DNA of 41,738 bases from assembly GCF_001194135.2 (NCBI RefSeq), contig NC_068987.1, positions 39,513,471-39,555,208 on the forward strand, given 5' to 3'. Below the pieces are notes generated by a model. That model was not told the origin of the DNA. It saw only the letters and a list, made by a program, of their open reading frames with translations, and ran no database searches. Of this stretch, positions 11,893 to 33,599 are shown in pieces (position 1 is the stretch's first letter; every line of letters starts with the position of its first letter). The position numbers and the translations under genes are program-made. Origin of the DNA: Octopus bimaculoides. Its lineage: Eukaryota.

Positions 11893-11925
<33 letters not shown>

Positions 11926-13272: not shown

Positions 13273-13275
13273 ATA

Positions 13276-14165: not shown

Positions 14166-14379
14166 AACTGGAACCCTCGTCGTCATAACCGACAGAGTGT
14201 CACGACGACAGTTAATGTGCATAGTGGAGGTTAGCATATGGTGAAATATACTTGTTATTTACATTTGACGGATATTTGTCCTCATCTTGTTTGTTGTTAA
14301 CACAACGTTTCAGCTGATAAATCCTTATAACCTGTATTTTTGAGTGCTACATTACATTTTTCTTTATGTTTATTAAAGT

Positions 14380-15339: not shown

Positions 15340-15340
15340 G

Positions 15341-15418
<78 letters not shown>

Positions 15419-15462
15419 ATGTNNNNNNNNNNGTGTATATCTATGTTCATGTGTACTTGTGC

Positions 15463-15503
<41 letters not shown>

Positions 15504-15620
15504 CATATACGTATACGTATATGTGTGTATATGTATGTATATATGTGATTGTGTTATGGGTGTGTGGATGTGAGTGTATGTGTGTGTATATGTATGAATA
15601 TGTTTATTTATATATATATA
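15340..15620. repeat. Compound (TA)n/(TG)n/(TATG)n microsatellite
   Basis: Directly visible; contains a 10-nt N gap. Confidence 0.95.
15423..15432. other. Assembly gap (N)
   Basis: 10 N. Confidence 1.
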
Positions 15621-15849
15621 TGTCTGTAGAGGTTAATAAACCATCTAAAGGATATTATATATCCATTATACTACTAGATGTGAACCTACGTATTTTTAAC
15701 CAAGTGCTTATTATTGCATGGCAATATTGCAATTAAATACTCGGTGTGGGTGGGGGTAAATTGGAAATTTACCCATGATTTATAAGGCAAATAAGAAAAT
15801 GGAGAGGATATAAAATCAACAAACATTCCATTATATCTATTTATTAAAT

Positions 15850-16692
15850 GATAACAAGCATGTGTTTAAGTGGTACACGTAAATGAATGATATCAGCCAA
15901 TAAATACATACACATATATATGAAGATGAATGAATAATAATAGATGAGTGTACAGAAACAAATCACTTATGCCCATTTCTACCATGAAGCCTCAGAATCT
16001 TCCAAGTCATCTTCATCATGTCAATGATATACATGTATGAAGAAACATTGGACAGAGATTGGGTTGAGCATCAAGGCTTCTTCAGAGATTACAAATATGA
16101 GGAAACTAACATGTGGGAAATTCAGTTAGAATGATAGAGTTGGGTCAATAAGATAAGATAGAGTAAAATAGGTAGAAAATAAAAAATAATGTAATAGACA
16201 TGGTAAGGAAAAGTAAGAACTTCATTTCAAGGTGTTATTATAATCCATGGTATTCCATCCTGTGGTAAGTAAAGTCACTCTAAGGAGATACATCCGTAGG
16301 CTGCAGTTTACATCATGTTTCCATTATACTGAGGGAAAGAGTGAAGGTAGTATGCTATGTGGTGGGTTGAATGATATGGTCCGTGCTACAGGGTTCAGCG
16401 GTTAGAGGCTAAACACTATTTAATAGATATAGCAATATTAAAGGAGTTGGTCAAAATAACTTAAATTGAACCTGTTGGGGAGAAATTAATACATAACTAC
16501 ATTAATGAAAGAAAAGAATATTTGTTCATCCTTGTATATCACTGAAAGGATGAGGATGACTTGGAAGGCTGTAAGTGATTTGTATTTGTACACTCACCTA
16601 TTATTATTCATTCATCTCCATATTATATATGCTTACATATTTATTGGCTGATCTCAGTCATTTATTTGCACCACTAAAACACGTTTGTTATT
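15850..16692. repeat. Element bounded by ~160-180 bp imperfect inverted repeats (15850-16033 / 16533-16692)
   Basis: atcagccaataaata..gatgaatgaataataatagatgagtgtaca..cttccaagtcatcttcatc matches the reverse complement of gatgaggatgacttggaag..tgtacactcacctattattattcattcatc..tatttattggctgat. Confidence 0.8.
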
Positions 16693-16696
16693 TTCT

Positions 16697-17017
16697 TATT
16701 TGCCATCTCCTTCATTGGACACTAAACTCGGCTTGCGAAGACCTGTAGGGGCAAGTGAAAACGAAATCGTGATGGCACCTGTGCTCAGTGTCGCCTCCCT
16801 GGCACTTGTGCCGGTGGCATGTGTAAAAGACATTTGAGCAAGATCGTTGCTAGTGCTGCTGGACTGGCTCCTGTGCAGGTGGCACGTAAAATAAACCATT
16901 TTGAGCATGGCCATTGGCAGTACCGCCCAACTGGCCTTCGTGCCGGTGGAACGTAAAAGCACCCACAACGTGCAACCCATGCTAGCATGGAAAGCAGACG
17001 TTAAATGATGATGATGA
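16697..17017 (+). mobile_element. RTE 3' UTR copy (sense, internally deleted) ending in (GAT)n
   Basis: Reverse complement of the 17350-17700 sequence. Ends aacccatgctagcatggaaagcagacgttaaatgatgatgatga. Confidence 0.85.
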
Positions 17018-18005
17018 TCATCATCATCGTCGTTTAACGTCCGCTTTCCATGCTAGCATGGGTTGGACGATTTGACTGAGGACTAGTGAAACCAGATGGC
17101 TACACCAGGCTCCAATCTGATTTGGCAGAGTTTCTACAGCTGGATGCCCTTCCTAACGCCAACNNNNNNNNNNNNNNNNNNNNNNNNNNNNNNNNNNNNN
17201 NNNNNNNNNNNNNNNNNNNNNNNNNNNNNNNNNNNNNNNNNNNNNNNNNNNNNNNNNNNNNNNNNNNNNNNNNNNNNNNNNNNNNNNNNNNNNNNNNNNN
17301 NNNNNNNNNNNNNNNNNNNNNNNNNNNNNNNNNNNNNNNNNNNNNNNNNNGGGTGCTTTTACGGGCCACCGGCACGAAAGCCAGTCAGGAGGTACTGGCA
17401 ACGGCCACGCTCAAAATGGTGTATTTTACGTGCCACCCACACAAGAGCCAGTCCAGGGGCACTGGCAACGATCTCGCTCAAAAGTCCTTACACATGCTGT
17501 GGGCACAAGTGCCAGAAAGGCGATGCTGAGCACAGGTGACATCACGATTTCGCTTTCGCTTTACCCAACAAGACTTCGCAAGCTGAGTTTCGTGTCCAAT
17601 GAAGGAATCGACATTGGCATGGGTGCCAGTCATCGAATTTAACTCGATTTCGTTTACACTTGCCTCAACAGGTCTTCGCAAGTGGAGTTTAGTGTCCAAT
17701 GAAGGAAGGTACGCATAAGTGGACTGGCTGAGGCCTTAGATTTAGGTCTCACTTGGATTGCCGGGTCTTTTCACGCACAGCATATTTCCAGTTGGCAGAT
17801 TTTCTACAGCTGGATGCACCACCTAACGCCAACCACTCAGAGAGTGCAGTGGGTGCTTTTACGTGCCAACGGCACGGAGGCCAGTCAGGCGGTACTGGCA
17901 ACGGCCATGCTCAAAATGCCAGGGGCACTGGCAATGATATCCCTCGAAAGTCCTTACACATGCCGCGGGCACAAGTGCCAGAAAGGCGACGCTGGGCACA
18001 GGTGC
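17018..18005 (-). mobile_element. RTE 3' UTR copies (antisense): one at 17018-~17745 across a gap, a second partial copy at ~17780-18005
   Basis: Same 3' UTR motifs as 13276-13567 (ggtgcttttacgtgcc, ggtactggcaacggccacgctcaaaatgg). Confidence 0.85.
17164..17350. other. Assembly gap (N)
   Basis: 187 N. Confidence 1.
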
Positions 18006-18099
18006 TATGTATGTGCGTGTATATATGTATGTATTTATATATGAATAAAATACATGTGTGTGTGGATATATATGTATACACATATATATATATATATGG

Positions 18100-19161
18100 A
18101 TAAAACTTTCAGAACGTTTGTGCAAGCACATATATTTGTTCGTATTTATACGTATTTACCTATATACATTTAGTGATAGAAGTGTATACATATAATAAAC
18201 CATAGTTCTTTTTTAATGAAAGTTTATAACACCTATTTTCCTTACATGATTACCAAATATACATGTTTTTCGTAAATTTTAATATTTCTCGTATATTGTA
18301 ATATTTTACAAAGTATTCATATATTTTGTTACCAGGTATTTATTTTAAAAGCTTATTCATGTTAACATTAAAATGTAGTATACCAGTTGTTGGTAAATCC
18401 AAAAGCTTTTTGTATATTTTAATATTTGTTTTGCAGAGTTACCTCCCTATTAAGTTACAAAATTATTTTTTCACTTAGGAAATTATCTTAGAAGTAAACA
18501 TAACAGATTCCTTTCTGTATATATATTTTTTTATTATCCCCCTTAGTATTTAAGGCTCCTTAGACAATTTCTTAAAATTTTCCTTGAATCTTAAATTTTT
18601 GTATTTTCCTGATTAATTTTAATGGACCCAATAAAATGCTACTTTTTTTAAATATTAGCTGACCAATTACGTTGTAGGACTGACATTGGGCTTACCTCAC
18701 TTATCAAAGGAGTATTATGATGACATTCTTTTGTTAGTAAATAACATCACAATTTATACCAAAATTATTTCTTTATTGATACAATTACGTAATGATTCCC
18801 CAACTCTGTTTTCTTTAAATTTTATTGCATAGTTTTTAGTTTCTAACATACGATCCCTGTTATAAAGATCATCCCATTAACCCCATCCGATAACGTTAAT
18901 TTTTATTATCTCCTCCAAATTGAAATAAGATGTGATTTCACAACTTTTGGATATAACCTTGGACTTTACTTTTTTACTTCTTACCATTATGGACTCTCTG
19001 ATGAAGCTTTGGTATTCAATTTTTGTATGATGCGTCGACTTTGGCATACTGGATCCCCAAAGTAGAGTTGTATTTATTTATTTATTCCTATGATTATAAT
19101 AAATAGATCTTGCTGATGTTTGTCAATTGAATCTCTTCTCAATTTTCTTCCTTGCCTTATT
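18100..19161 (-). repeat. ~1 kb repeat copy B (inverted partner of 12240-13272)
   Basis: For example aaaactttcagaacgtttgtgcaagcaca (18102) vs tgtgcttgcacaaatgttctgaaagtttt (13242), and cttccttgccttat (19147) vs ataaggcaaggaag (12241). Confidence 0.85.
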
Positions 19162-19229
19162 AACTTATATAATATACAAGCACAGATACCCGGCCTTGCT
19201 CAGGATTAAAATGGCATAGATTTTTATTG

Positions 19230-19500
19230 TGTTACTTGTCTCAGTCATGTGACTGCAGCCATGCTGAAGCACCGCCATTGATCGAAGAAATCAACCACAG
19301 GATTTATTCTTTGTAAGACTAGTATTCATTCTGTCAGTGTCTTTTACCAAACCGCTAAGCTACGGGAATGTAAACACAGCATCATCAGTTGTCAAGCAAT
19401 GGTGGGGGTACAAACACAAGACACACATACACGACAGTCTTCTTTCAGTTTCCGAGCACGAAATCCACTCACAAGGTTTTGGTCGGCCTGAGGCTATAAT
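19230..19500 (-). mobile_element. SINE body and tail (head truncated)
   Basis: Minus strand: ttatagcctcaggccgaccaaaaccttgtgagtggattt..ggaaactgaaagaag..ggcggtgcttcagcatggctgcagtcacatgactgagacaagtaa. Recognised from memory as a common mollusc SINE domain plus a LINE-derived tail. Confidence 0.6.
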
Positions 19501-19529
19501 AAGCACATATATATATATATATATATATA

Positions 19530-20394
19530 GTAACTGACATACCCAGTAATTCCCGGGAAAGCGGGCTTATCCCTTGGTTCCATTCTCATAATTGTTTCGT
19601 TAATCTAGTCACAATACAAAGTATGTAGCTCTTAAAACAGCTTTTGTGTATTTATTGACAATACCGAACTGTCTTACAAAGGATCTTGTTTTTAGGAAAT
19701 CCTAATAAGTTATGAATAACCAAATTGTGAAGTCAGTTATGTAATAACATGAAATTAATTACCCTACAGTAAGAATTCGAATAAAGTAGTCCCGAAACAG
19801 GCTTTAATACGTTCTCAGAGTACATAGATTTTAGGAAGAAATACTAGTAAGGTATGTATACTAAAATCGTGAAACATTTTAACAGGCTAATCAGATATGA
19901 GATAATAACAATTCAAAGTAATTAACTGTGAAAAAAAACTTTTGTGTGTTCCCAGAGAATATTACCCTCAGCAGCGCTAGTGTTGGTATATTCGTGAATA
20001 AGTCAGTAATATCGTTTAGGAGAATATTATTTACCTGTTTAAGCGTTGTATTGGTTAAATTGAGAAAATAACTAAAATGGTTCAAATACTAAGAAATAAG
20101 CATACTGAAAATGAATGGGTTATTTCCTTTGGTGACTATTTCCAGGAGGGAATGGGTTATTTCCCTTGGAAGCTTCAAAATAATTACTCCCACCATTCAT
20201 TCATACCCAAATGTTATTCCTCCCACCATTTACCCAAACATTTTTTTGAAATCAATTTATACTTAAAACCTCCCCAGACACATAAGCAATGTGCATGTGA
20301 AGTTTAAGAAAAATCGGTTGAGCCATTTTGGCACAAAACGAGGACATACCGATACACACACACACACAGACACTTTCAGTTTTAATATGTAAGA
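19530..20394 (-). mobile_element. Non-autonomous Helitron
   Basis: Minus-strand 5' end A|TCTTACATATTAAAACTGAAAGTGTCTGTGTGTG...AAAATGGCTCAACCGATTT (typical Helitron 5' end). 3' hairpin CCCGG-GAATTA-CTGGG ~12 nt before a degenerate CTAG (TTAC)|T. Sits at an AT junction in (TA)n. Confidence 0.7.
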
Positions 20395-20960
20395 TATATA
20401 CATAATAATATATAAATGTACATGCATGTATGGATACACAATTATAAATACATAGTAAATCCTATACAGATGCACTTCCATACATGTACATTCAATGGAC
20501 CCCTACACATATGCAGATATACATGTATACACATGCATATATATATATATANNNNNNNNNNNNNNNNNNNNNNNNNNNNNNNNNNNNNNNNNNNNNNNNN
20601 NNNNNNNNNNNNNNNNNNNNNNNNNNNNNNNNNNNNNNNNNNNNNNNNNNNNNNNNNNNNNNNNNNNNNNNNNNNNNNNNNNNNNNNNNNNNNNNNNNNN
20701 NNNNNNNNNNNNNNNNNNNNNNNNNNNNNNNNNNNNNNNNNNNNNNNNNNNNNNNNNNNNNNNNNNNNNNNNNNNNNNNNNNNNNNNNNNNNNNNNNNNN
20801 NNNNNNNNNNNNNNNNNNNNNNNNNNNNNNNNNNNNNNNNNNNNNNNNNNNNNNNNNNNNNNNTATATATATATATAATAATAATACAAAGAATATATAT
20901 ACATGTATACACACATATATGTACATACTTACATCTACATGTGTATATACATGCATATCA
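20395..20960. repeat. (TA)n/(TACA)n low-complexity region around a gap
   Basis: Directly visible. Confidence 0.9.
20552..20863. other. Assembly gap (N)
   Basis: 312 N. Confidence 1.
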
Positions 20961-21069
20961 GGGTACAGGACGTTAGAACAATAAACTACAGACAACGGAA
21001 CGAACACATAGGAAAACGGAAAGCCACTTGGAATATCCCTTCATCAGCTGTCTCTATTCTATCTAGACG

Positions 21070-21104
<35 letters not shown>

Positions 21105-21535
21105 AGTTAGACATAAGAGGAATTGGTTACTGTGTGCAAGAGAAAAGACTGTGCTGGTTTGGTCATGTGATGCAGATGGATGCCAAGAACTCCATAAAGA
21201 AGTGTCAATCTCTCAAAGCGTATGGTACACATGGAAGTGGGACACCCAGACAGACATGAGATGAAGTACTGAAGAATAACCTCAGGAGCTGAACCTTTCA
21301 GGCAAGATGACAAAGGACTGGGACACTTGGCACCTTGCCATACTCAAGAAGACCTTATATCCTGCAGCAGAAGTGTTAAGACTGATCCTTTCGGTTGTAT
21401 CACGCCATTAAGAAGGGCATCCAACCACAGAAACCATGCCAAAACAGACTGGAGTCTGGTGCAGCTCCCCAGCTCTGATCACACCATCCAGCTCCTGCCA
21501 GCATTGGCAACAGACATTAAATGATGATGATGATT
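21105..21535 (+). mobile_element. Decayed RTE LINE 3' portion
   Basis: CVQEKRLCWFGHVMQM..IKKC..CGSGTPRQT-like sequence, then 3' UTR (aagggcatccaaccacagaaacc) and (GAT)n at 21522. Confidence 0.8.
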
Positions 21536-22063
21536 CAGTTATGTACAGACTTTACATATAAATGAACAAATACAATCAGAACAAAATATACAGAATCATA
21601 CATGCTTATTTAAATATACATACATACACTTATACATGCATACATATAGTCATGCACACAATTATTAGCACCCCTTGTCAAAGACAGGTTTTTATTGACA
21701 TTTTCACTAAAATTAGATATCTAAAAAAATGCTCTTATGTCACAGTAGTATGAACAACTAAAGCCTAAATTTTGCCAAAGAGGACATCTGATGATGTTTA
21801 ATATGGTAATTTCAGCCAATAAAAATTTCAAGTATGATTCAAAACTATTGGCACCTACATAATTTGAATATTGCATTGCAAAAACAACTGATTGGGTTAC
21901 AATATAAGAATACATGCCATATAAGAGGTTACATCATTCTGACGAAGTTCTAAAATCCAGAAATTTCTAGAATAGGAGGCAAGGCTACATGACATCACTT
22001 GAAAAATGTTTTTGTAACCTTCTTTTGGTCAACAAACTATTTTATCTGCAACATCATGGAAAA

Positions 22064-22345
22064 GGTGCAGGAGAACAGTTATGACTTAAGAAGAAGACAG
22101 CTGATGCTCACACTGCTGGAGATGGATATCAGACAGTATCTAAGAATTACAATATGGCTATTCAACTGTTCACAGCATAATCATGAATCATTGAGATACC
22201 GGTTTGTTGGAGAATAAAGTAGATGCAGGAGGAGTAAACTCTTTTCAGAGCGAGATTAGCAAACCGTTAATTAAAATGGTCAACAATGATCCAAAGATAA
22301 CAATGACAGTGATGAAGGCAAATTTGACAGCTACTAGCATTTCAA
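22064..22345 (+). mobile_element. Tc1-family transposase N-terminal remnant
   Basis: MEKVQENSYDLRRR/ADAHTAGDGYQTVSKNY resembles the Tc1 paired-like DNA-binding start (MGKxKELSxDLRxRIVDAHKAGEGYKxISK). Frameshifted and truncated. Confidence 0.65.
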
Positions 22346-22811
22346 CCGCTATGCTTTTAGAACTCATCTCTATAGCTAATTAAGGTAATAAAAGGTATCA
22401 ACTACTACTAAGGAACCTTCCAAGCAGTTGAAAGTAATCTATTTCACATGGATGCTTAGTGCTGCTGATCAAGTACTGTAAAAACCTGTGTAATTTACAT
22501 ACTTTTTTGCAAAAACAAAAATAAACTCTAGTGGGGGTGTAAATTACATGAGTAGATCATTTCCAGAATTTTTTTAGAAATTTTTTTGTTGAAAAATGAT
22601 ATACAAATGTAAACATTTGTACCGGAAGTTGACTCATTTAATATCAGAATAGGTTTTTATAGAAAAAATATAATGAAGTTGACTTTTATTTATGCTGGGC
22701 GGTATAATGCTTACTTTTTCTGTACAAATTTACTAAAACCATTAAATGGTTAACTACTTCTTGAAGTTTGACATTCACGCTGTAATCACTCTCCGGGCCA
22801 TATTTTACATT

Positions 22812-25090
22812 GCAGATGCGAACATTATTGAACCTAGTAACTCCACTTGGAGATCGCAAGTGTTAGTTGTTCAAGAAAAATAAAGCAAAGAATGGTGATT
22901 GAATACTCAGAGACGATTAACAAATTTACACAGCTACCCCCTTCCTAAAATTGATAAGTTAGTGAACACTATCGCTAAGTATAAAGTCTACAGTACTATA
23001 GACTTACGTTTGGCATACAATCAGATTCCTCTATCAGAGAAAGACCATCAATTCACTGCCTTTGAAGCTGATGGTAAATTATGGCATTATACTAGGATGC
23101 CATTCAGAGTAACTAATGGCAGCACATGTTTGCAACATATAATGGACGACTTTGTGAGTAAATACAAACTGCGAGATACGTTCCCATTCATAGACAATTT
23201 AACCATATGTGGGAAAGATCAAAATGATCACGATAAAAATTTAGGAAAATTTGAAATGGCAGCAAAAAGTGAAGGGCTTACCATGAATGAAGACAAATGT
23301 GTTTACTCAACAACTCTTGACTTTCTTGGATACCGTATCTCACACAATACCCTCAGCCCTGACCCAGAAAGACTTGCTCCACTCCTCAATCTTCCTACAC
23401 CAACTGACCAGAAATCATTAAAACGTATAGTCGGTATATTTTCTTATTATGTTAAGTGGATCTCCAAATTTTCGAACAAAATATATCCTCTAAATAACGT
23501 ATTAAAATTTCCTCTAAACAACCAACAAGTAAAAGCATTTGAGTCATTAAAGGTAAAACTAGCCAATGCTGCCATTCAAGTAATAGATGAGAACATTCCA
23601 TTTACTGTTGAGACGGAGGCTTCAGATTTTTCCATATCTGTGACACTAAATCAAGATGGAAGGCCAGTCGCATTCCATTTTCATACACTGCAAGGTAGCG
23701 AACAGTACCACTACTCAGTTGAAAAGGAAGCCCAAGCAATTATTGAATCAATTCATCATTGGAGACACTTTCTTCTAGATAGACATTTTACATTAATAAC
23801 TGTTGCATTCATGGATAATTATAAAGCAACGAGCAAAATTAAAAATGATAAAATTATGAGATGGCGCATTGCGTTATCTCCATACTCATATGATATTCAC
23901 TATTGCCCAGGATCCAGCAACATCACTCCAGATGCATTCACAAGGGTACGCTGTTCAGCAATTAGTTCACATTCACTTTATGAGTTACATGCAGCACTGT
24001 GCCATCCTCGTGTAGTACGCCTTCATCATTTCGTCCACAGTAGAAATCTTCCATATTCATTAGAGAACGTGAAACAAATATGTAGGAATTGCTCTATATG
24101 TCAAGAAGTGAAACCACAATATTATAAACCAGACTCAGTTAACTTAACTAAGGCCATGCAGCCCTTCAAGTGAATTTCCATCAATTTCAAAGGTCCGATT
24201 CCTTCCATGAAGCATCCTTATCTCCTAACAATACTTGACGAGTACTCTCGGTTTCCGTTTGGTTATCCAGTATCTGACAAATCAGCTCAGACTGTAATAA
24301 AGTGTCTTACAGACTTGTTCTCAGTTTTTGGTATGCCCAGTTGTGTATGTTCAGATCGTGGAACTGCCTTTATGTCTAGAAGTTGCAATGTAAGGACATT
24401 GCAACGAGTAGGAGGACACCATACAATCCCACTGAGAACAATCAAGTAGAAAGATATAATGGTATTATTTGGAAGTCAGTACTACTCTCTTTGAAAACCC
24501 ATGCCCTTCCAGTATCTTCATGGGAAACAGTTCTTCCAGATGCGTTGCATTCAATCAGATCTCTACTTTGTACGTCCTCATGGACATCTTTTTAACTATC
24601 AAAGACGTTCAGCAGCAGGAACATCTATGCCAACATGGCTTCTTAACCCAGGACCTGCGCTTGTTCAAAGGAACAATCACACTAACAAGTATGACCCTAT
24701 TGTGGACCAAGTTGATTTAATCGAAGCCAACCCCCAATACGCTCACGTCCATTATCCAGATGGTTGCGAAACCACAGTATCCACAAAACAATTGGCATCA
24801 CCAGGGAAGATTAACCCAACTGATAACCTAACCCAAACATGTCCCTCAAGAGCCAGACAGGGAGCCAACTGAAATTTCTCCTCCTCCTAGAGATAACTGT
24901 CAAGAACAAAAAGAAGAATCCCCTCAGCAGTGTCGATCACAAAGGATTCGGTAAGCCCCAGAAAGGCTTGATCTATGATTTGTTTCCCTTCTTTTTCCAA
25001 GAGAGAGTGAATGTTATGCAAATAACACTGATATAAAGAGCATGTGCATGACAGGAAGAGGAAGAGAGAGAACAGCCATTCAGAATAACA
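22812..25090 (+). mobile_element. 5'-truncated Ty3/Gypsy pol (RT-RNase H-integrase) with PPT and a short 3' LTR; decayed
   Basis: IIEPSNSTWRSQV, YPLP, IDLRLAYNQI, MPFRVTNG, FIDN, FLGY; RNase H ETEASD..YSVEKEAQAI..HWRHFL; Zn-binding H..H..CSIC; integrase DEYSR, SDRG, YNP..NNQVER across frameshifted ORFs 22899-24872. PPT aagagagagtgaa at 24999-25011. TGTTAT...ATAACA at 25012-25090. Confidence 0.93.
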
Positions 25091-25599
25091 TACAGGACTG
25101 TGACTAAAAATTAGTTTCTTTGAACCAGGATTTACTGGTTATACATTACATGTTTATTGGTAATTTAACTTATTTTGCAACAATTGTGCATATTTATTCA
25201 TCAGCTATGTTTTTGTAGATAAGAATTATCAACAACTTTTCCTGTGATTGTGATTTGAGAAGGCATACAGAAGTATGCTAAAGATCAGCATAATCTCTTG
25301 TGGGCAAGAAATGTAAAATACAGTTTATTATAAACACAAACACTTTGTAATTTAATAGCCTTCAATGTGACACCTGTTAAACAGAAATTATTTTTATTTA
25401 ATCAAAATTTAATAAAATCTAATCATAAGTAAGTGAAATTATGCTAAATACAACTAAATAAAAAACCTTTTTTCCCTGGCCATATCGGCAATTCTGAAAA
25501 CTTTTAGGTGTGAATTTGACATGAGTAGAAGCTTTTTTTTTAATAATTTTTATCCTGAAAATCACCTACATAAATTACACAGGTGCGCAAATTACATGG

Positions 25600-25795
25600 G
25601 TTTTTATGGTTGGACTATTAACTCAGGGGTTACAAGTTCAAATCCATTGCAGGCACTTCAATGGTTTTGTCCATGCCACTGTCATTAATACAAACTAAAT
25701 TATCTGGGAAGGCTGAGAAAGACCAGCATCCTTTCCATGTAACAACGTATCATCCATTTAATACCATGGAAATAGAGCTAAGTATCAGCTCTTAA
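25600..25795 (+). mobile_element. Degenerate SINE-like fragment
   Basis: B-box-like AAGTTCAAATCC at ~25634, followed by a SINE-like body. Confidence 0.35.
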
Positions 25796-26094
25796 AATAT
25801 CTCCATCAATCTTGTTTATGAAGAGATTTCTTAGTTAAACCCACTGAAGAGGGAGACTGCGGAAGATATAGGCTGAAGTAATAAAAAGTGAGCTGAAGAT
25901 GTTGCACCTCACAGTAAAGATGACAAAGGACTGTCCTGATGAGTGATATGCAGTACAGGAAAAGACCTGACCACTCATAGTGAAATATACATTGAGATGA
26001 TGGTAGTGACAAAAGCTGGTGATATATACAGATACGCATCCATACATGTGCACACATACCCCTACACATATGCATATATATATATATATACACA

Positions 26095-27570
26095 TGCACA
26101 TCATCATTTAATGTCTGTCTTCCATGCATGCATGGCTAGGACAGTTGACAGGAGCTGTCCAGGTAGAAGACTTCCTCAGGCTACTGTGTCTGCTTTGACA
26201 GGGATTTTATAGCCCTTCCTAACACCAACCACTCTGCAAAGTGGACTCAGTGCGTTTTACATGGCACTAGAACAGGTGAGGTTAGTTTTGGCATGATTGT
26301 TACAGCTGGATGCCCTTCCAAATATCAGCCGTTTTACAGTGTGGACTGGATGCTTTTTATGAGGCACCAGCAATGACAAGGTCACCAAGTAACTTGCAAG
26401 GAATTTTGGGAGGGAACTTGTGTCAGAGGATGAAAAGTAAGAGTGTAACAGAGAGAAAGAAATGGGTGTCTTGCTATGACGGAGGGGGCATTGGAGGCAG
26501 TGATCTAATGTCAAATGATGAAAGGTTAGAGCATGACAGAGAAAGATGCAGAAACAGGTATCTTGCTATAAAGGAGGTACATGGTTACCCAACAAGCAAG
26601 AGTGAGAAAGAGAGAGAAGAGAAAGGTACAAGAGGACAGAAACAGGTCCGCTGATATAAAGAAGATATTTGGTTACGTAGTCAAAGGGAAATGCAAGAGG
26701 GGCCAGAATGATCAAGACTGAGGGCAAAAACAAGTGTGCTGCTGTAGAGGAGATATATGGCTACCCAGCCAGAGGAAAGAGTGAGGAAAAGAGAGAAAGA
26801 GTGGGAAACAGCAAAAGTGCAAGAGAGAGTAGGAAGATGATGAAGTGCCAGGATATATTCACAAGTAAAAAGGATCAGAGCATAGATGCGATGGTAGAAT
26901 AAGGAAGAGAGAGGTATGGTAGTCATAATATACATGGTCAGGTATTGCCAAGAAAGTATAAGTAGGGAGTAGAGATTGCTGTGACTTGCAAAAACTTGGA
27001 TATAAAAATGGGGTGGGGGAAAGCAGCAATACAATGAGCAAGAAGGGCAGGGAAGGGGATTGGAAGACAATCATAGTTTATAAAGAGGAAATGTAAGAGA
27101 AAGATGCAGTTTTTGATGAGGAGATGTAGTTTGGTTTCTTAGGGTAGGGTGTGTGAAAAGTTTGTTGTTACATGTAGGTGGGACACAATGCTTCTAGTGC
27201 TCAGTTTTGCTGATGCGGGCAGGTCTTCTCTAGAACCCCCTATCACCAAACATCTCAGTCCATTGTCTTTTCCTTTGTGAACCTAACATCCTAAGATCAG
27301 TCCTCACCACTTCATCTCATGTCTTCCTGGGTCTCCCTCTTCCACAGGTGCCATCAATTTTTAATGACAGACACTTCTGTATACAGCTTTTACTCATATG
27401 CATCACATGTCCAAACCAACACATTCTCCTCTCCTGCATGCCACATTTAATCCCTTTTATGTCTAACTTTTCTTTTAACACAGTTATGCTTTGTCAGTCA
27501 TGCACACTGATGTTGCAGATTAAACAGGGCATACTACCTTCTTGCTGTGTGCAAGAAAGAAGATTGCACT
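26095..27570 (-). mobile_element. Old RTE LINE 3' portion with an expanded 3' UTR
   Basis: ORF C-terminus-like sequence at ~27250-27570 (GRPRKT*DEVVRTDL on minus) and a (GAT)n-type 3' end at 26095-26260, with a purine-rich ~90-bp tandem in between. Confidence 0.65.
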
Positions 27571-27755
27571 GGTTTGATATACATTTATATATCATTTTAT
27601 TTTAAAGTCTACTTTTTCATGCTAGCATGAATCAGGCAAGAGTATGTTGGAGTAGAGATTTCTATGGCTGGATGCCTGTTCAACAGCTAATATTTTAAAC
27701 ACATGCATCAAAAAGAAAATTAAGTTCGTATGTAGTTAGAAAATTAGATATTCAC

Positions 27756-27796
27756 CAAAGTAGTGCCCAAATTTTCAATAACAGGAATTTTATAGC
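27756..27796 (-). CDS. SNRPA1: U2 snRNP A' coding exon 2 (41 nt)
   Basis: tttcag|GC TAT AAA ATT CCT GTT ATT GAA AAT TTG GGC ACT ACT TTG|gtgaat = (G)YKIPVIENLGTTL. Phase 1 in and phase 0 out fit both neighbouring exons. Confidence 0.96.
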
Positions 27797-28147
27797 CTGA
27801 AATACAATAAGACAATTTTATTAGGAGAGCCAAATTTATGTAATTATATAAGTGGTTCCCAACATTTACTCAAATGACACTCATGTTTATTCAATGTAAA
27901 GCAGTAAAAAATGTAGTTCATTGTTAATAACTGTACAAAAATTAGAGAAAATACAGGAGTTGTTTGTGCTTTTTGAAATATATACGCTTTCAAATAGCGA
28001 CAAAATTTTAGAATATTTTGTCACTCAATAAACTGACTAAAAATACAGGCCTCACCACTGAAATGTTGCGACATTTGAGCTAGGAAGCAGTTGTGTGTCT
28101 GAAACAGTTTATTTACAATTGTTTGTTGTTAATATTTAAAATTCATA

Positions 28148-28347
28148 GGCGGCGAGCTGGCACAACCGTTAGTACGCCGGACAAAATTCTTAGCGGCATT
28201 TCGCCCTTCTTTACGTTCAAATTCCGCTACATTGCCTTTCATCCTTTAGGAATTGATACAATAAGTACCAATTGAGAAGTATTACCAATGTAATCGACTT
28301 ACTCCAACCCCCGAATTGCTGGCTTTGTGTCAAAATTTGAAACCAAT
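28148..28347 (+). mobile_element. SINE in SNRPA1 intron 1
   Basis: ggcgagctggcacaaccgttagtacgccgg..cttagcggcatttcg..gttcaaattccgc..ttgcctttcatccttt..aataagtacc: a tRNA-like head plus a conserved central SINE domain. Confidence 0.7.
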
Positions 28348-28669
28348 ATTTAAAACTCACACATAGTTTTTAAAAAATTATTTTTGTCAAAGCTTCAAGT
28401 TAAAACAACAAATTTCATTAATCTAACTTGTCTATATTGATTTTTATACAAATTGTACGTAACAGAACAATTTGAAAATGCACAAAAGTTTCATTTTTCA
28501 GCTAGTATTAAGTTAATTTTTTAATTTCATGACGCATAAAGAGAGTTATACATGTATGATAATAATATTCTTTTGAGATAATAACACGAACATAAATTTA
28601 TTAAGCGATATCATTAGAAATTAGAAAGTTTGTTGATTAAAGAAAAGATCAAGAAGGAAACATGATTAC

Positions 28670-28751
28670 CTCGGAGATCTAATTCACGGTCTCTAACCGG
28701 GTTGGTATATTGAGCTGAATGTTCTATTAAGTCAGCAGATAGTTTAACCAT
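28670..28751 (-). CDS. SNRPA1: U2 snRNP protein A', coding exon 1 (82 nt)
   Basis: Reverse complement reads ATG GTT AAA CTA TCT GCT...CTC CGA G|gtaatc = MVKLSADLIEHSAQYTNPVRDRELDLR(G), near-identical to the U2A' N-terminus as I recall it (human MVKLTAELIEQAAQYTNAVRDRELDLRG). GT donor at 28669-28668. Too short for the ORF track. Confidence 0.97.
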
Positions 28752-29096
28752 TGTTGTTTGTTTAAGCCAACAAATTATTATCTTAACCACTCTAAATATA
28801 ATAATAATAATAATACACAGTCAGGTTGTTGAAAAGTATTTAACAACACACTCGTAAGTTTCAATTAGCAATAGAATAGAGGCCAAACACATGGAAGATT
28901 AATGGCGAATTGCGCCTGCGCGAAATAAGGGAGGTAATTCTGGTGAATTATCGTTGGGGGCGCTACTGAGTTTTTTAGCGTCTTCTTCTCGTCTTCCCTT
29001 TATAAGCAGACGACAGACAATCATTTGTTATCGCACTTCAATGGAATGTTAAATACTTTTATATAAAAAGAAACCAGTTCAGGCATTGCGTACAAG
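28752..29096. promoter_or_regulatory. Putative bidirectional promoter and 5' UTRs of SNRPA1 and SYCP1
   Basis: 345 bp between divergent ATGs. Local CpG cluster at ~28890-29035 in otherwise CpG-poor DNA. ATGGCG (YY1-like) at 28902-28907, TGCGCCTGCGC (NRF1-like) at 28911-28921, TATATAAA at 29060-29067. TSSs are not determinable from sequence. Confidence 0.7.
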
Positions 29097-31763
29097 ATGC
29101 AAAGTACTTTAGCATCGATGTCTCAAGTCTATGAGAAGACTGATCAAAATTTGGCAAACAGTTCTGAGTCTACAAACTATGGTCTCAGTTTAACAAAAAA
29201 ACTTAAAATGCCTCTTATTATGCATAAAAGTACAACTCTGCTTCAAACGTTCCAAGAAAATCTAGTCTCTAAAGAAAAAACAAAACAAGAGAAACAATCA
29301 TTAAATACTCAAGATGTAGAATGCAAACTATTTTCCCTGCATAGCCGACTCCGACAGGAAGCTGAAAAGATAAGGGAGTGGAAACTTTCCACAGAAGCTG
29401 AAAGCAAACAAAAAGAGAAAAAGATAGGGGAATTGACCCAAACTATTGAGAATCTTAGAAAATCTTTCATAGAATTGCAAATAGAAAATGAAAACTTAAG
29501 TCAAAAGATGCAAGAAGAAATTAGCAATAGAGAAGAAATTTTGAAAAAAATTGATTTTACTCGAAAAATGTGTAACATTGTCAAAGAACATTCTCAAACT
29601 GTAGAGAATAAAATGATGCAATGTGAAGCAGAAAGCAATGAATTAAAATATAAAGAAAGAGAACATTTTGAAAAATTTGAAGAACTTTCAGTAAAATTCA
29701 ATGATTTAAATATTTCAGCTAAAGATGAAGAAAATAAATTAAAAAATGAAATTAATAATATTTTTCAGGAGAAGGAAAAGCAGAGAAAAGTTTTAGAAAA
29801 GAGGATAGCAGATATGCAGAATATCAATAAGGAGTTACAGAATGAAATTTGTTGTAGAAATGAAAAGTTGGAACAATTAAATAAAGATTTACGTGATGCT
29901 GAAGAGGAGAAAGATCAACTAAAGTTTGATTATGAAGAATCTAAAAAAGGTCTTTCAGAAGTGGAATTTAAATACACAACCCTTAAATTTGAATCAACTG
30001 AGAAAAGTAATGAAGCTTTATTAATAAAGGCTTCTTTAGAAAATCTTTTAAAAGAAGCAAATGAAGTTTACGAAAAACTAGAAAAAGAATATGGAGAATT
30101 AAATGTTAAATATACATCAGCAAATAAAATGATTGAAGACTTGAAGAGTGATAAAGATATCTTAGTTTTGGAGAATGCAGAGTTGAGTGAAAATCTAAAA
30201 CAAGAAATAAGCCATAAAGACAATCTACTGGCCCAGTTAAATTCCAAATCTGCCAAGATAAATAACCTCAATAGCAACATTATATTGTTAAATGATGAAG
30301 TAGTCAATGCAAAGGCTTTAAATGTGGATGCTGCTGATATGCATGAAAAAACAAAAGAAAAACTTGAAACTTTAGAAGAAAAATACAAAACCCTAAGCAA
30401 TGAGTCAGAAGTACTAAAAGGCAAATTTCAAGAAAAAGTGGAACAATTAAATGAGGCCTTGAAAAACATTGAAGAACTTAGAAAAACATCTTCAGTTGAA
30501 TCTAATGAACTGACAAAAATTATATCAGAGCTAAGAAATGAAAATAATCTGCTGGAGGATGAAATATCTAATCTAAAAACACAAATGAAAAATCATGAAA
30601 GTAAATATTCTTCTCACATTGGCAAATTAAATAAAACAATTGAAGAAAATGCAATTTCAGTTAGTAAATATGCAGATATAGTGAAGGCAAAAGAAACAGA
30701 AATTGAAGAATATAAAGGTAAACTTCAAACAATACAAAAAGAAATTAATGAATGTCAACAAGAAAAAGTAGTCTTAATGGGTTATCAAGAAGAACTCAAA
30801 CAAATGACAATTTTGAAAGAAAATGCAATTCAAGATAAGGAGAGAATTTTAAAAGTAAGTGAAAATCAAAAAGAAGAAATGGTGAATACTCTTGAAAAGT
30901 ATAAAAAAGAAAATCAGAAAATATTTGACATTAAGACTAAAGAAATCTACGCAAAGAATGAAAATGAAATCAAAGAACAAAAATTGAAACATGAAAATGA
31001 TTTGAAAGAAAAAACAAGTGAATTTGAGAAAGAGATCTTACAGTATAAAAGTGAAATTTCTGAACTAAAACAGAATATCCAATATCAAATGGAGAACAAT
31101 ATCCAGCTTGAAGAAAAAATAGATATAATGCTAAAGGAGAAAGAAAATATGAAAAAGGAAATGTATGAAAATACTATGAAAACAGTGTTTCCGACAAGAA
31201 AACAACCTCAAGTGGCAGTCCTGATGACACCACAACATCCAATTAATATGACACCTTCAAGAATAGATGTTAATTCCTTTAAATCAAACTTCTTAACTTC
31301 CAAGAAGAGAAAAGTGGTGTTTAATTCTGATGATATGATACTTGTGTCTGATTCAGACTCCTCAGTATCCGAATACCAAAAGAATGACAAAATCACAATA
31401 CGGACCCCATTATTGAAACAACACCAGAAGAACATAAATTCACCCAAGAAGGATAATGTTTCTGATCATAAGTTAGAAGAGGTGGTCCTTACTACTGAGA
31501 ATCAACAAAATCTTGAAAATAACATTTCAGCAAGAAGTAGGAAAACCAGAATTTTGACTGGAAATAATAAGACCAAAAAAAGTCCAGTGAAACAAAATTT
31601 AAATACTGTTAAACCAAAGAGAGCAAATGTGAAAAAATCTGAAACTCAACCTGTGAAGAAGTTTTTCAAATCCCCAAAGTCTAAGAGATCACCAGCATCT
31701 TCAATTGATAAATATGCTTGGTTTGATATGGATTCTGTGTTTGGGTTTGGATCTGATGATTAA
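29097..31763 (+). CDS. SYCP1: Synaptonemal complex protein 1-like transverse filament protein, intronless 888-aa ORF
   Basis: aa ~78-163 (LHSRLRQEAEKIREWKLSTEAESKQKEKKI...LRKSFIELQIENENLS...TRKMCNIVKE) align without gaps to the conserved SYCP1 N-terminal coiled-coil motif as I recall it from human (VYSKLYKEAEKIKKWKVSTEAELRQKESKL...QRKAIQELQFGNEKVS...TRHLCNLLKE). This is followed by ~600 aa of E/K/L-rich heptads and a basic S/T-P-rich tail containing KKRKVVF..SDSDSS (cf. human KKRKMAF..NSDSSE). A at -3 of the ATG; in-frame TAA upstream at 29064. Confidence 0.92.
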   Translation: MQSTLASMSQVYEKTDQNLANSSESTNYGLSLTKKLKMPLIMHKSTTLLQTFQENLVSKEKTKQEKQSLNTQDVECKLFSLHSRLRQEAEKIREWKLSTEAESKQKEKKIGELTQTIENLRKSFIELQIENENLSQKMQEEISNREEILKKIDFTRKMCNIVKEHSQTVENKMMQCEAESNELKYKEREHFEKFEELSVKFNDLNISAKDEENKLKNEINNIFQEKEKQRKVLEKRIADMQNINKELQNEICCRNEKLEQLNKDLRDAEEEKDQLKFDYEESKKGLSEVEFKYTTLKFESTEKSNEALLIKASLENLLKEANEVYEKLEKEYGELNVKYTSANKMIEDLKSDKDILVLENAELSENLKQEISHKDNLLAQLNSKSAKINNLNSNIILLNDEVVNAKALNVDAADMHEKTKEKLETLEEKYKTLSNESEVLKGKFQEKVEQLNEALKNIEELRKTSSVESNELTKIISELRNENNLLEDEISNLKTQMKNHESKYSSHIGKLNKTIEENAISVSKYADIVKAKETEIEEYKGKLQTIQKEINECQQEKVVLMGYQEELKQMTILKENAIQDKERILKVSENQKEEMVNTLEKYKKENQKIFDIKTKEIYAKNENEIKEQKLKHENDLKEKTSEFEKEILQYKSEISELKQNIQYQMENNIQLEEKIDIMLKEKENMKKEMYENTMKTVFPTRKQPQVAVLMTPQHPINMTPSRIDVNSFKSNFLTSKKRKVVFNSDDMILVSDSDSSVSEYQKNDKITIRTPLLKQHQKNINSPKKDNVSDHKLEEVVLTTENQQNLENNISARSRKTRILTGNNKTKKSPVKQNLNTVKPKRANVKKSETQPVKKFFKSPKSKRSPASSIDKYAWFDMDSVFGFGSDD

Positions 31764-31823
31764 GGACACAAGTTGACAATCAGATTATTAAGAGAACAAA
31801 AAGAAAAAGAGAACCAAATTAAA

Positions 31824-31829
31824 AATAAA
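31824..31829 (+). terminator. Candidate polyadenylation signal of SYCP1
   Basis: First AATAAA 60 nt after the stop codon, followed by U-rich sequence. Other AATAAA occur further on (e.g. 32616). Confidence 0.4.
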
Positions 31830-33599
31830 GAATATTTTATTCCCATGGATATTTTATTAACTCAAATATTGAAGACTGCCACTTGTAATAATTTCTATAT
31901 TTTGTTATTCTCTGTTTTGGTTTTATTTAAACAGTTTATTTTTCTCTAAAAAATAGAATTTTAGCCAAAATCAAATTATTTGGATAGTTGTTAAAAAATG
32001 TTTTGATTAAAGTTGTTATTACGTAAATGTTATGAAGTCTTATGTTAAGGTTACATATAGAAAAATTAAGTTCTTAATGCATAAGTTTATATATATACTT
32101 TAAAATACTTTTAATGACAAAGTTTTATGAGAGCTGTTAACCTCATATTTCCTGTTCCTATTTTCATACACAATCATCTATTGACAATGCCCAATGAAGA
32201 ATTATCCAAAGGCTGGGTTAGAACTGAAAACTTGTATTTCTTGAAAATTCAGCATTTCAATAAGTGTAACATCAAAGATACAGTCACTGTAGCACTAACT
32301 TTTGTAACTGTTTGAGACATTTAAATTGACTGCAGGAATGGATGTCTTATTCTACCAAAGTCTACACTAGAGCATTAAATGGTTTGAACCTCTACATTAA
32401 AAATATAGGCCCTGAATTTGAAATTAATCTCTTTATATATTAATAAGCAACCTAAAGTTATTTAGTAAATAGGCAAATTGAAATGTGCAAAACAAAGAAA
32501 GGAAGAAAAGCAGAATCACGAAAGATGAAGTGAATATTTAAAGAATCCCAAAATTCTCTGAATTCATACAGCTTCCATTTCTAGGTAATTTTTGTGTCTG
32601 TACCTTACTTTGTCCAATAAAGAAGTATTGCCTGCTAATTGAAATATTTGTTATTAGATGTTATATATGAGACAAATAGTTATTACATATCTACAAATCT
32701 TGAAGAGAATTAATCAGGTGTAATGGGTTTAATAGAGTTTTTCTTATCAAACACAACTTAGTGTTCTTCTAGCGTGTTTCTTTAAACAAAGTCTGTTCTC
32801 TTTAACTCTTTGTTACACATATTTTTGTTGAAATACATCGCCTTTGCTTTACCTAATTTTGAAAATAATGAAGAATGTAGTAAAATAATTTTGTCATTAT
32901 TAAGTTGGCGTTTGAAACTTAAATTAACATGCAACTTTGATAGAAAATTTTAACTTAGATAATTTTAAAACAAGAAGTTTATATCATAAAACCAGGGCAA
33001 TCACAGGATGTGTCACTGAAATTTTTATCTGTCAATATTTGTAGATATGCATATAAAGTTGAACAGAAAATATCTATTTCAAATATTTGTTTAATCTGTT
33101 ATTTTTGGTGTCCCCAGTGTGCAGATAGGGGAATGGCCTGTAGATATACAGGGAAGCTGCGACTACTCAATAAGCAATCCCAGACAAAATCACAGCTTGC
33201 CCATTTGCAAGGCATAACACCCTGCCAGGGTTATGTTGAAATCCTGAAGCCCTGAAAAGAGAAGAAGTGCCACTGTTGTTAGAATGCAGGATAGTAATAG
33301 GAAATGGAATGCAAGACATAAAATACTTTGTTTTATAGATTTCTTTCCACTCCTCACAACAAATTATACCTTTGTGAAACTTAGTCTGGAAAACCCATCA
33401 ATATAACTGACACTGCAATTGTCTATAGAACCTTGAAAGACATTCTATGACTTGCATTAACTTAAGAAAGTTATCCCACATCGGTTGTCGTGTAGTCAAG
33501 CAAGAAGCACATTCTGCTGTAGTTCTGGCTCTGCCTCAGAGTTCAAAAAATCAGCTACAAAGACAAATGTACATACATTTTTGAAATGTAAGCAAAATA

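What the first reader, a model, noticed from the sequence alone, without database searches (positions are those of the whole stretch)
29097..31763. Intact, intronless SYCP1: a probable functional retrogene of a core meiotic gene
Seen: 2667 nt open from ATG to TAA, with no intron, stop, frameshift or TE, in a window where every other long ORF is a broken transposon and the neighbouring gene has introns of 0.9-18 kb. It keeps the full three-part architecture (short head, long coiled coil with the conserved N-terminal motif, basic tail). Known: vertebrate SYCP1 has about 30 exons, and this genome is rich in LINE reverse transcriptases that can retropose germline mRNAs. Inference: a germline retrocopy under purifying selection, possibly an orphan retrogene that replaced the intron-containing parent.
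Basis: partly seen in the sequence, partly recalled or inferred. Interest (0 to 1): 0.85.

Follow-up and report, generated by a model that had tools for sequence, protein, structure and literature searches.

The report
Ancient intronless SYCP1 retrogene in cephalopods
Octopus makes its core chromosome-pairing protein (SYCP1) from a single uninterrupted exon sharing a promoter with a housekeeping splicing gene, while snails, clams and chitons use about 30 exons, so this looks like an old, still-working reverse-transcribed copy that replaced the original gene, as already known for amphioxus and sea squirts.

Summary
Window 29097-31763 (+) is one 888-codon ORF encoding a genuine SYCP1: Pfam SCP-1 61 bits (cutoff 23), a match to the human SYCP1 alpha-N crystal structure, a heptad-periodic proline-free rod, a basic tail, and the mollusc C-terminal motif.

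Abalone, scallop and chiton SYCP1 span 22-33 kb (at least 26 coding exons in the first two). At least 11 intron positions shared by abalone and scallop fall inside the octopus ORF and are absent.

A relative only ~36% identical (two species, probably squid/cuttlefish, not verified) is also intronless. It lies in the same head-to-head arrangement with U2 snRNP A' (SNRPA1), with conserved promoter motifs. So there was one event before that split.

Selection is purifying: dN/dS 0.24 between two octopuses (p=7e-8) and 0.27 in the sister lineage. No second cephalopod SYCP1 was found among predicted proteins.

Not shown: poly(A) tail or target-site duplications, a genome-wide search for the parent, octopus expression, Nautilus. 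In-situ loss of all introns is not excluded.

Precedents are amphioxus and Ciona SYCP1. The cephalopod case appears unreported, so this is a new member of a known kind.

The parts
29097..31763 (+). Single-exon SYCP1 coding sequence (888 aa plus TAA)
   Evidence: ORF list and translation. Pfam SCP-1 E=6.6e-17. 96% identical to annotated O. sinensis 'synaptonemal complex protein 1-like', which is also one exon. dN/dS 0.24.
29289..29762 (+). Conserved N-terminal block (residues 65-222, CM1 / alpha-N end), the midline self-assembly region
   Evidence: Pfam match covers residues 70-211 and PDB 6f62/6f5x cover residues 79-179. None of the 34 substitutions against O. sinensis falls here. 65% identity to P0002, against 31% in the mid-rod.
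29322..31190 (+). Coiled-coil rod (residues 76-698)
   Evidence: Residues 40-698 contain no proline; pI 5.26; heptad periodicity z=10.8 against shuffles.
31191..31760 (+). Basic, proline-rich C-terminal tail (residues 699-888), presumed chromatin/DNA-binding end. It includes the terminal motif AWFDMDSVFGFGSDD at about 31716-31760.
   Evidence: pI 10.08 with 11 prolines. The terminal motif matches the mollusc consensus AWFDLDSVFGFGPED. The last 20 residues are 60% identical to P0002.
28752..29096 (.). 345-bp intergenic region between the SNRPA1 ATG and the SYCP1 ATG: a compact CpG-rich bidirectional promoter plus the SYCP1 5' UTR
   Evidence: CpG o/e 1.12 against 0.33 window-wide (97.6th percentile); the homologous L002 interval has 1.10. 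Conserved blocks align across octopus, O. sinensis, L002 and the L003 5' UTR.
28901..28921 (.). Conserved promoter blocks AATGGCG (28901) and an NRF1-like palindrome GCGCCTGCGC (28912). O. sinensis and L002 have CGCATGCGC.
   Evidence: Alignment A2; coordinates. Assignment to NRF1 rests on the consensus recalled from memory and was not tested.
29001..29015 (+). TATAAGCAGACGACA block, with a 12-mer invariant in all four aligned sequences, at or near the SYCP1 transcription start
   Evidence: AAGCAGACGACA is found at window 29004, L001 9908, L002 10146, L003 45 and L004 27. The transcript-like contig L005 starts inside it.
28668..28751 (-). Exon 1 of U2 snRNP A' (SNRPA1), the head-to-head neighbour
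   Evidence: MVKLSADLIEHSAQYTNPVRDRELDLRG matches PDB 1a9n U2A' residues 1-28 at E=6e-9. The same exon is in the same relative position in L001 and L002.
31824..31829 (+). First AATAAA after the stop codon, a candidate poly(A) signal; a second lies at 32616
   Evidence: Pattern positions. Not validated with octopus transcripts.

Best explanation
This is the functional SYCP1 gene of Octopus, encoding the transverse-filament protein of the synaptonemal complex.

Origin (inferred): it arose as a processed, reverse-transcribed copy of a roughly 30-exon ancestral gene. The copy landed head-to-head with the housekeeping gene SNRPA1 (U2 snRNP A'), about 350 bp from its start codon. It uses that compact CpG-rich bidirectional promoter and replaced the parent gene. 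This happened once, before the split between the octopus lineage and a second deep lineage that is probably squid/cuttlefish.

Protein function (from established SYCP1 biology, not tested here): the conserved N-terminal block self-assembles at the midline, the roughly 620-residue coiled coil spans half of the central region, and the basic tail anchors on the chromosome axes.

Shown here: SYCP1 identity and architecture; absence of all ancestral introns; multi-exon state and different neighbours in three other mollusc classes; conserved SNRPA1 adjacency and promoter motifs in the sister lineage; purifying selection in both lineages.

Inferred: reverse transcription as the mechanism; promoter sharing; loss of the parent; meiotic expression in octopus.
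For: - SYCP1 identity. The protein nests among mollusc SYCP1s and matches them at both termini.
- Derived intronless state: Haliotis, Pecten and chiton genes span 22-33 kb, the first two with at least 26 exon HSPs. At least 11 intron positions shared by Haliotis and Pecten map to octopus residues 194-837, and all are missing. Published intron counts are 21-25 for Aplysia, Lottia and Capitella.
- New genomic context: no SNRPA1 within 10 kb of the outgroup genes, and no shared flank exons.
- Single old event: P0003 is a contiguous 2961-nt ORF on a 148-kb TE-rich contig. It has SNRPA1 exons 1-3 upstream on the opposite strand and shares AATGGCG, CGCATGCGC and AAGCAGACGACA.
- No UTR intron in the sister lineage: transcript-like contigs from three runs are collinear with that genomic contig from nt 19 of the 5' UTR.
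- Function retained: dN/dS 0.24 and 0.27. No substitutions in residues 65-222. CDS 97.6% identical against about 89-94% for most collinear flank segments.
- Orphan status: among exhaustive-search representatives with E<1e-30, the 27 with a known identity (named via or 48, or characterised) include only two cephalopod-like clusters, both intronless. Five more were not identified.
- Precedent: amphioxus and Ciona SYCP1 retrogene replacement, the amphioxus copy also sharing a bidirectional promoter.
Against: - No poly(A) remnant and no target-site duplications flank the gene; the direct repeats found are A-rich chance matches. This is expected for an old event, but it means the defining scars are missing.
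- The ancestral locus cannot be defined. The three outgroups have three different neighbours (OSTM1, a MutS homolog, MRPS31), so relocation by ordinary rearrangement after in-situ intron loss is not excluded.
- Absence of the parent rests on predicted proteins, not on a genome-wide translated search.
- The organisms behind L002 and L003-5 are not identified.
- No octopus expression data were examined.
- The Nautilus state is unknown.
Confidence: 0.68

Rival explanations
1. In-situ loss of all introns. The ancestral multi-exon SYCP1 was converted at its own locus by recombination with a full-length cDNA. The SNRPA1 adjacency is either ancestral and lost elsewhere, or arose by a later rearrangement.
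For: No poly(A) or target-site duplications. SYCP1 neighbours differ among abalone, scallop and chiton, so microsynteny around SYCP1 is labile in molluscs and 'different locus' is not strictly provable.
Against: None of the three outgroup classes has SNRPA1 within 10 kb, and no flank exons are shared. Simultaneous loss of about 30 introns, including 5'-proximal ones, is atypical of cDNA-mediated intron loss, which from general knowledge is usually partial and 3'-biased. The tight 345-bp head-to-head junction with a housekeeping promoter matches the amphioxus retrogene pattern.
Confidence: 0.2
2. Two independent retropositions of SYCP1, one in the octopus lineage and one in the P0002/P0003 lineage.
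For: SYCP1 is retroposition-prone: amphioxus, Ciona and mouse retrocopies, and another unrelated contiguous copy on L008.
Against: Both lineages have the same neighbour in the same orientation, at about 350-390 bp spacing, with shared promoter/5' UTR motifs including an invariant 12-mer.
Confidence: 0.03
3. A recent octopus-specific retrocopy coexisting with an intron-containing parent, or a young processed pseudogene.
For: The genome is rich in reverse transcriptases, and no whole-genome search for a parent was possible.
Against: The copy is shared with a lineage at saturated synonymous divergence. dN/dS is 0.24-0.27. The frame is intact in four sequences. No second cephalopod cluster appeared in the exhaustive protein search.
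Confidence: 0.04
4. Not SYCP1, but some other long coiled-coil protein with a chance N-terminal resemblance.
For: The Pfam match covers only residues 70-211, and there is a weak intermediate-filament hit below its cutoff.
Against: The Pfam score is 61 bits against a cutoff of 23, and PDB human SYCP1 matches at E=1.4e-15. All named homologs are SYCP1. The C-terminal motif is shared with mollusc SYCP1, and the tree places the protein within molluscs.
Confidence: 0.01

Closest known systems
Amphioxus SYCP1 (AmphiSYCP1) retrogene replacement (Ferrier et al. 2005; Garstang & Ferrier 2018, PMC5803294)
   Same: Single coding exon of about 3 kb encoding full-length SYCP1. It is the only SYCP1 in the genome, conserved across species of the lineage, and it shares a bidirectional promoter with an unrelated neighbour gene (CHIC there, SNRPA1 here).
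   Different: It is a different phylum with a different insertion site (next to the ParaHox cluster). The amphioxus gene acquired a multi-exon 5' UTR, whereas in the cephalopod sister lineage the 5' UTR is collinear with the genome from nt 19. That paper lists Lophotrochozoa as multi-exonic and did not tabulate octopus gene structure.
Ciona intestinalis / C. savignyi single-exon SYCP1
   Same: Zero introns and a single copy, interpreted as retrogene replacement. Cephalopod and tunicate CM1 sequences are both long-branched in the published tree.
   Different: Independent lineage and locus, within a compact genome where retrogene replacement is frequent. The octopus genome is large and TE-rich.
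Canonical multi-exon SYCP1 of other molluscs (Haliotis, Pecten, Mytilus, Liolophura) and of vertebrates
   Same: Same protein family and architecture: CM1 block, long coiled coil, basic tail, and (among molluscs) the terminal WFDxDSVFGFG motif.
   Different: Those genes have at least 26 coding exons over 22-33 kb and 32-33 introns in human and mouse. Their proteins are about 150-240 aa longer than the cephalopod ones (888-910 against 1044-1128 aa), with a longer proline-free rod.
Mouse SYCP1 processed retrocopies (Sage et al. 1997, as cited in PMC5803294)
   Same: Evidence that germline SYCP1 mRNA gets retroposed.
   Different: Those coexist with the functional parent. Here the intronless copy is constrained and apparently the only one.

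Membership tests
SYCP1 (Pfam PF05483 SCP-1), synaptonemal complex transverse filament | Significant match to the family profile above the curated threshold | tested here: met
   61.3 bits against a cutoff of 23, E=6.6e-17, residues 70-211.
SYCP1 (Pfam PF05483 SCP-1), synaptonemal complex transverse filament | Conserved N-terminal CM1 / alpha-N self-assembly motif | tested here: met
   Residues 79-179 align to human SYCP1 crystal constructs 6f62 and 6f5x, E=1.4e-15. No octopus-octopus substitutions in residues 65-222.
SYCP1 (Pfam PF05483 SCP-1), synaptonemal complex transverse filament | Long central coiled coil flanked by a non-helical head and a basic C-terminal tail | tested here: met
   Proline-free residues 40-698; heptad periodicity z=10.8 in the rod only; tail pI 10.1. 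No dedicated coiled-coil predictor or structure model was run.
SYCP1 (Pfam PF05483 SCP-1), synaptonemal complex transverse filament | Orthology: groups with SYCP1 of related taxa over its full length | tested here: met
   The NJ tree nests the cephalopod clade among molluscs, and the terminal motif is shared with the mollusc consensus. The tree is a crude distance tree without support values.
SYCP1 (Pfam PF05483 SCP-1), synaptonemal complex transverse filament | Localises between the lateral elements of synapsed meiotic chromosomes | not testable with these tools
   Needs immunostaining of spermatocyte or oocyte spreads.
Functional retrogene with parent loss (retrogene replacement / orphan retrogene) | Intronless coding sequence where orthologs are multi-exonic, with ancestral intron positions absent | tested here: met
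   and published Table S1.
Functional retrogene with parent loss (retrogene replacement / orphan retrogene) | Located at a locus unrelated to the parental one | tested here: inconclusive
   SNRPA1 is not near SYCP1 in three outgroup classes, and no flank exons are shared. However, the outgroup neighbours differ from one another, so the ancestral locus is undefined.
Functional retrogene with parent loss (retrogene replacement / orphan retrogene) | Poly(A) tract remnant and flanking target-site duplications | tested here: not met
   Only low-complexity A-rich chance repeats were found, with no A-run downstream. Erosion is expected given saturated dS to the sister lineage, so this lowers proof of mechanism rather than excluding it.
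Functional retrogene with parent loss (retrogene replacement / orphan retrogene) | Parental multi-exon gene absent from the genome | tested here: inconclusive
   No second cephalopod SYCP1 was found among predicted proteins. Five of the 32 best representatives were not identified, and a whole-genome TBLASTN was not possible.
Functional retrogene with parent loss (retrogene replacement / orphan retrogene) | Evidence of function: intact frame, purifying selection, transcription | tested here: met
   dN/dS 0.24 (p=7e-8) and 0.27. Transcript-like contigs from three sequencing runs in the sister lineage end about 20 nt after an AATAAA. Octopus transcription itself was not examined.

The most novel reading that the evidence does not exclude
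Cephalopods (at least octopuses plus a second deep lineage, probably decapodiforms) carry an unreported, hundreds-of-millions-of-years-old orphan SYCP1 retrogene. That would make SYCP1 a gene replaced by its own retrocopy at least three times independently in animals (amphioxus, tunicates, cephalopods), with further candidate cases on unidentified eukaryotic contigs such as L008. At least twice the copy would have survived by capturing the bidirectional promoter of an unrelated neighbour gene. The replacement may go with the faster evolution and the roughly 150-240 aa shorter protein seen in cephalopods.
Probability: 0.6. Interest if true: 0.55.

Novelty: new member of a known kind. Interest (0 to 1): 0.45.

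Why it matters
SYCP1 is indispensable for chromosome synapsis, so wholesale replacement of its gene by a retrocopy is a rare natural experiment. It shows how an essential, tightly germline-regulated gene can be re-wired to a new promoter.

A cephalopod case would turn two chordate anecdotes into a recurrent pattern, and it would contradict the published statement that lophotrochozoan SYCP1 genes are multi-exonic. It also offers a compact, conserved 345-bp promoter, with three conserved blocks, in which to ask how meiotic specificity is obtained next to a ubiquitously expressed splicing gene.

Practically, a single-exon SYCP1 is easy to clone, tag or knock out in emerging cephalopod models.

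Tried and rejected
- Search for target-site duplications and a poly(A) remnant around the gene: only A-rich chance repeats. An A-rich stretch just after the stop codon (about 31790-31832) was not scored as poly(A), because the whole region is A-rich.
- Bacterial-type promoter and terminator scan of the intergenic region: irrelevant for a eukaryotic locus.
- Identifying the organisms behind SRR8281661/80/81 and ERZ21867824 through the literature: no hits, or unrelated ones.
- The first two word-index homology searches were swamped by vertebrate SYCP1 and missed other molluscs. These were reached only through the exhaustive profile search followed by a mollusc profile.
- Gigantopelta look-up: not on record.
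- SNRPA1 exons near the unrelated intronless copy on L008: absent. L008 also has no poly(A) tract.
- Search for traces of outgroup SYCP1 neighbours (OSTM1, MutS homolog, MRPS31) in the octopus window, O. sinensis locus and L002: none.
- One Pfam call failed because of stop codons in arbitrary frames.
- Structure prediction was judged unnecessary, because sequence-level evidence was decisive.
Full report
**Observation.** The window contains one uninterrupted ORF at 29097..31763 (+), ATG to TAA, 888 aa. The next longest ORF (22899..24173, 424 aa) is a reverse-transcriptase/RNase H fragment. From base composition, about 4e-23 frames of this length are expected to be open by chance. The exact protein is on record on GCA_001194135.2, chromosome CM046607.1. 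I recall this accession as Octopus bimaculoides, but that is from memory.

**Identity.**
- Pfam SCP-1 (PF05483) scores 61.3 bits against a curated cutoff of 23, over residues 70-211.
- Residues 79-179 align to the crystallised alpha-N end of human SYCP1 (6f62, E=1.4e-15).
- Residues 40-698 contain no proline. The rod (76-698) is acidic (pI 5.3) and has strong 3.5-residue hydrophobic periodicity (z=10.8), while head and tail have none.
- Residues 701-888 are basic (pI 10.1) and proline-rich.
- The last residues, AWFDMDSVFGFGSDD, match the consensus AWFDLDSVFGFGPED of abalone, mussel, scallop and sea-slug SYCP1.
- A distance tree nests the protein among mollusc SYCP1s.

**Is the intronless state derived?** Yes.
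- Haliotis cracherodii SYCP1 (1088 aa) spans 33,090 bp, and Pecten maximus SYCP1 (1128 aa) spans 30,857 bp. Each has at least 26 separate exon HSPs.
- The chiton Liolophura gene spans about 22.5 kb across two gene models.
- At least 11 exon junctions coincide between abalone and scallop and map to octopus residues 194-837. None is present in the octopus gene.
- Published counts agree: 21 introns in Aplysia and Lottia, 25 in Capitella, 23 in sea urchin and sponge, 32-33 in human and mouse, and 0 only in Ciona and amphioxus (Garstang & Ferrier 2018, PMC5803294, Table S1).

**How old is it, and was it one event?** O. sinensis has the same 888-aa single-exon gene, 96% identical. Two further proteins are more informative. 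P0003 is 986 aa as called, probably starting at Met92. P0002 is 910 aa. They are only 36-37% identical to octopus and 68% identical to each other.
- P0003 is one contiguous 2961-nt ORF on a 148-kb, transposon-rich ENA contig.
- P0002 sits on about 3-kb contigs from three sequencing runs. These begin within 48 nt of one another, and the longest ends about 20 nt after an AATAAA, so they are most simply transcripts. This is an inference.
- Those contigs align to the genomic contig as a single collinear block from nt 19 of the 5' UTR.
- Upstream of P0003, on the opposite strand, lie the same three exons that lie upstream of the octopus gene. Exon 1 (MVKLSADLIE[H/Q]SAQYTNPVRDRELDLRG) matches residues 1-28 of U2 snRNP A' (PDB 1a9n, E=6e-9).
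- The roughly 350-390-bp intergenic regions share AATGGCG, a CGCATGCGC palindrome (GCGCCTGCGC in the window) and an invariant AAGCAGACGACA 12-mer close to the transcript 5' ends.

The same neighbour, orientation, spacing and motifs argue for a single origin before these lineages split. Synonymous divergence is 0.066 between the two octopuses, 0.64 between P0002 and P0003, and saturated between octopus and P0002.

The sister lineage therefore has deep internal divergence, which from general knowledge fits Decapodiformes rather than nautilids. Its taxon could not be verified.

**Is it functional?**
- Between the two octopuses there are 34 non-synonymous and 31 synonymous differences. This gives dN/dS=0.24 and a binomial p=7e-8 against neutrality.
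- None of the 34 replacements falls in residues 65-222.
- The CDS is 97.6% identical, against about 89-94% for most collinear flank segments (150-bp profile).
- In the sister lineage dN/dS is 0.27.
- Across the deep split, conservation peaks in the CM1 block (65%), the terminal motif (60%), the proximal tail (49%) and the C-terminal end of the rod (44%). I recall these as the functional regions of mammalian SYCP1, which was not tested here.

**Is it the only copy?** The exhaustive profile search of 1.84 billion representatives found 32 proteins with E<1e-30. Of these, 27 have a known identity: named directly, named, or characterised here. Only the two cephalopod-like clusters are cephalopod, and both are intronless. 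The rest are echinoderms, other molluscs, annelids, a brachiopod, amphioxus, cnidarians, a sponge and others. Five were not identified. This is evidence from predicted proteins only, and no whole-genome translated search was possible.

**Mechanism.** The best explanation is retroposition of a germline SYCP1 mRNA next to the SNRPA1 promoter, followed by loss of the parent.
- The shared intergenic region is a CpG-undepleted island (o/e 1.12, 97.6th percentile; 1.10 in L002), whereas the SYCP1 body is CpG-poor (0.20).
- None of the outgroup SYCP1 genes has SNRPA1 within 10 kb, and no flank exons are shared.
- This parallels amphioxus, where the SYCP1 retrogene shares a bidirectional promoter with CHIC.

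The weak points are as follows. There are no poly(A) or target-site duplication scars. The outgroup neighbours (OSTM1, a MutS homolog, MRPS31) differ from one another, so the ancestral locus cannot be defined. In-situ conversion by a full-length cDNA followed by rearrangement therefore remains possible, and I rate it about 0.2.

**Comparison with what is known, and novelty.** SYCP1 retrogene replacement is established for amphioxus and inferred for Ciona, and mouse has SYCP1 retrocopies. The same paper used O. bimaculoides, Hapalochlaena and Sepiella SYCP1 mRNAs in an alignment. It did not tabulate their gene structure, and it states that Lophotrochozoa have multi-exonic SYCP1. Five full-text searches found no report of an intronless or retrogene SYCP1 in cephalopods. 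The library excludes most subscription journals.

The gene itself is already annotated as 'synaptonemal complex protein 1-like'. I therefore class the finding as a new member of a known kind. It is of moderate interest: a third independent case, apparently ancient, with convergent promoter capture.

**Verdict.** The event is ancient and shared, not octopus-specific. The retroposition scars are gone. The orphan status and the retroposition mechanism are inferred rather than proven.

Noticed in passing
L008:6849-10298 (ENA ERZ25070167, contig ctg281402): Another contiguous 1149-aa SYCP1 ORF (P0116) lies in the middle of a 12.4-kb genomic-looking contig. It groups with annelid-like sequences rather than cephalopods, and has no SNRPA1 exon upstream and no poly(A) tract. 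It may be a further independent intronless SYCP1 in an unidentified lophotrochozoan.
   Followed up: partly
Proteins P0133 (893 aa, 592-kb ENA contig) and P0135 (847 aa, 205-kb ENA contig): These are SYCP1-like products listed on large ENA metagenome contigs. If called as single ORFs, as on the other ENA contigs seen here, they would be further intronless SYCP1 genes in unidentified eukaryotes.
   Followed up: no
window 9320-28751 (-): SNRPA1 intron 2 is about 18 kb here but about 1.7 kb in L002. The expansion holds transposon debris, including the RVT_1/RNase H ORF at 22899-24173.
   Followed up: partly
window 29097-31763 versus 28752-29096: The SYCP1 gene body is strongly CpG-depleted (o/e 0.20, below the window mean of 0.33), while the promoter is undepleted (1.12). 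This would fit germline methylation of the gene body with an unmethylated promoter.
   Followed up: no
window 29097-31763; P0001-P0003 versus P0109, P0110, P0113, P0268: Cephalopod SYCP1 is about 150-240 aa shorter than that of other molluscs (888-910 against 1044-1128 aa). Its longest proline-free stretch is 636-693 residues, against 817-834 in abalone, mussel and Solemya. This raises the question of whether the synaptonemal complex is narrower in cephalopods.
   Followed up: no
window 28912-28921: The promoter palindrome is GCGCCTGCGC in this genome but CGCATGCGC in O. sinensis and L002. That is a substitution at the centre of an otherwise conserved motif.
   Followed up: no
L009:1-9655 versus L001:1-9658: There is an annotation discrepancy for the neighbour gene. 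Its product is 836 aa with no Pfam hit in the record that holds the window, but 157 aa with LRR_9 in O. sinensis. The exons seen here are plainly U2 snRNP A'.
   Followed up: no
Protein P0055 (metaclust, 1309 aa): This predicted protein combines RVT_1 and SCP-1 domains. It is probably a gene-model chimera of a reverse transcriptase and a SYCP1 sequence in a vertebrate-like source.
   Followed up: no
L007:1-8473 (-) and 10001-40857 (+): In the scallop Pecten maximus the multi-exon SYCP1 lies head-to-head with a full-length MutS-family gene.
   Followed up: no
window 13379-14167 and 20416-21007: These are very AT-rich stretches (GC 0.21-0.24) that carry overlapping ORFs of 155-224 aa on both strands. 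They look like low-complexity artefacts rather than genes.
   Followed up: no
window 17357-17483: A 67-nt unit is repeated 1.9 times at 81% match. Similar sequence recurs at several places in the window and in the O. sinensis locus, so it is probably an interspersed repeat.
   Followed up: no
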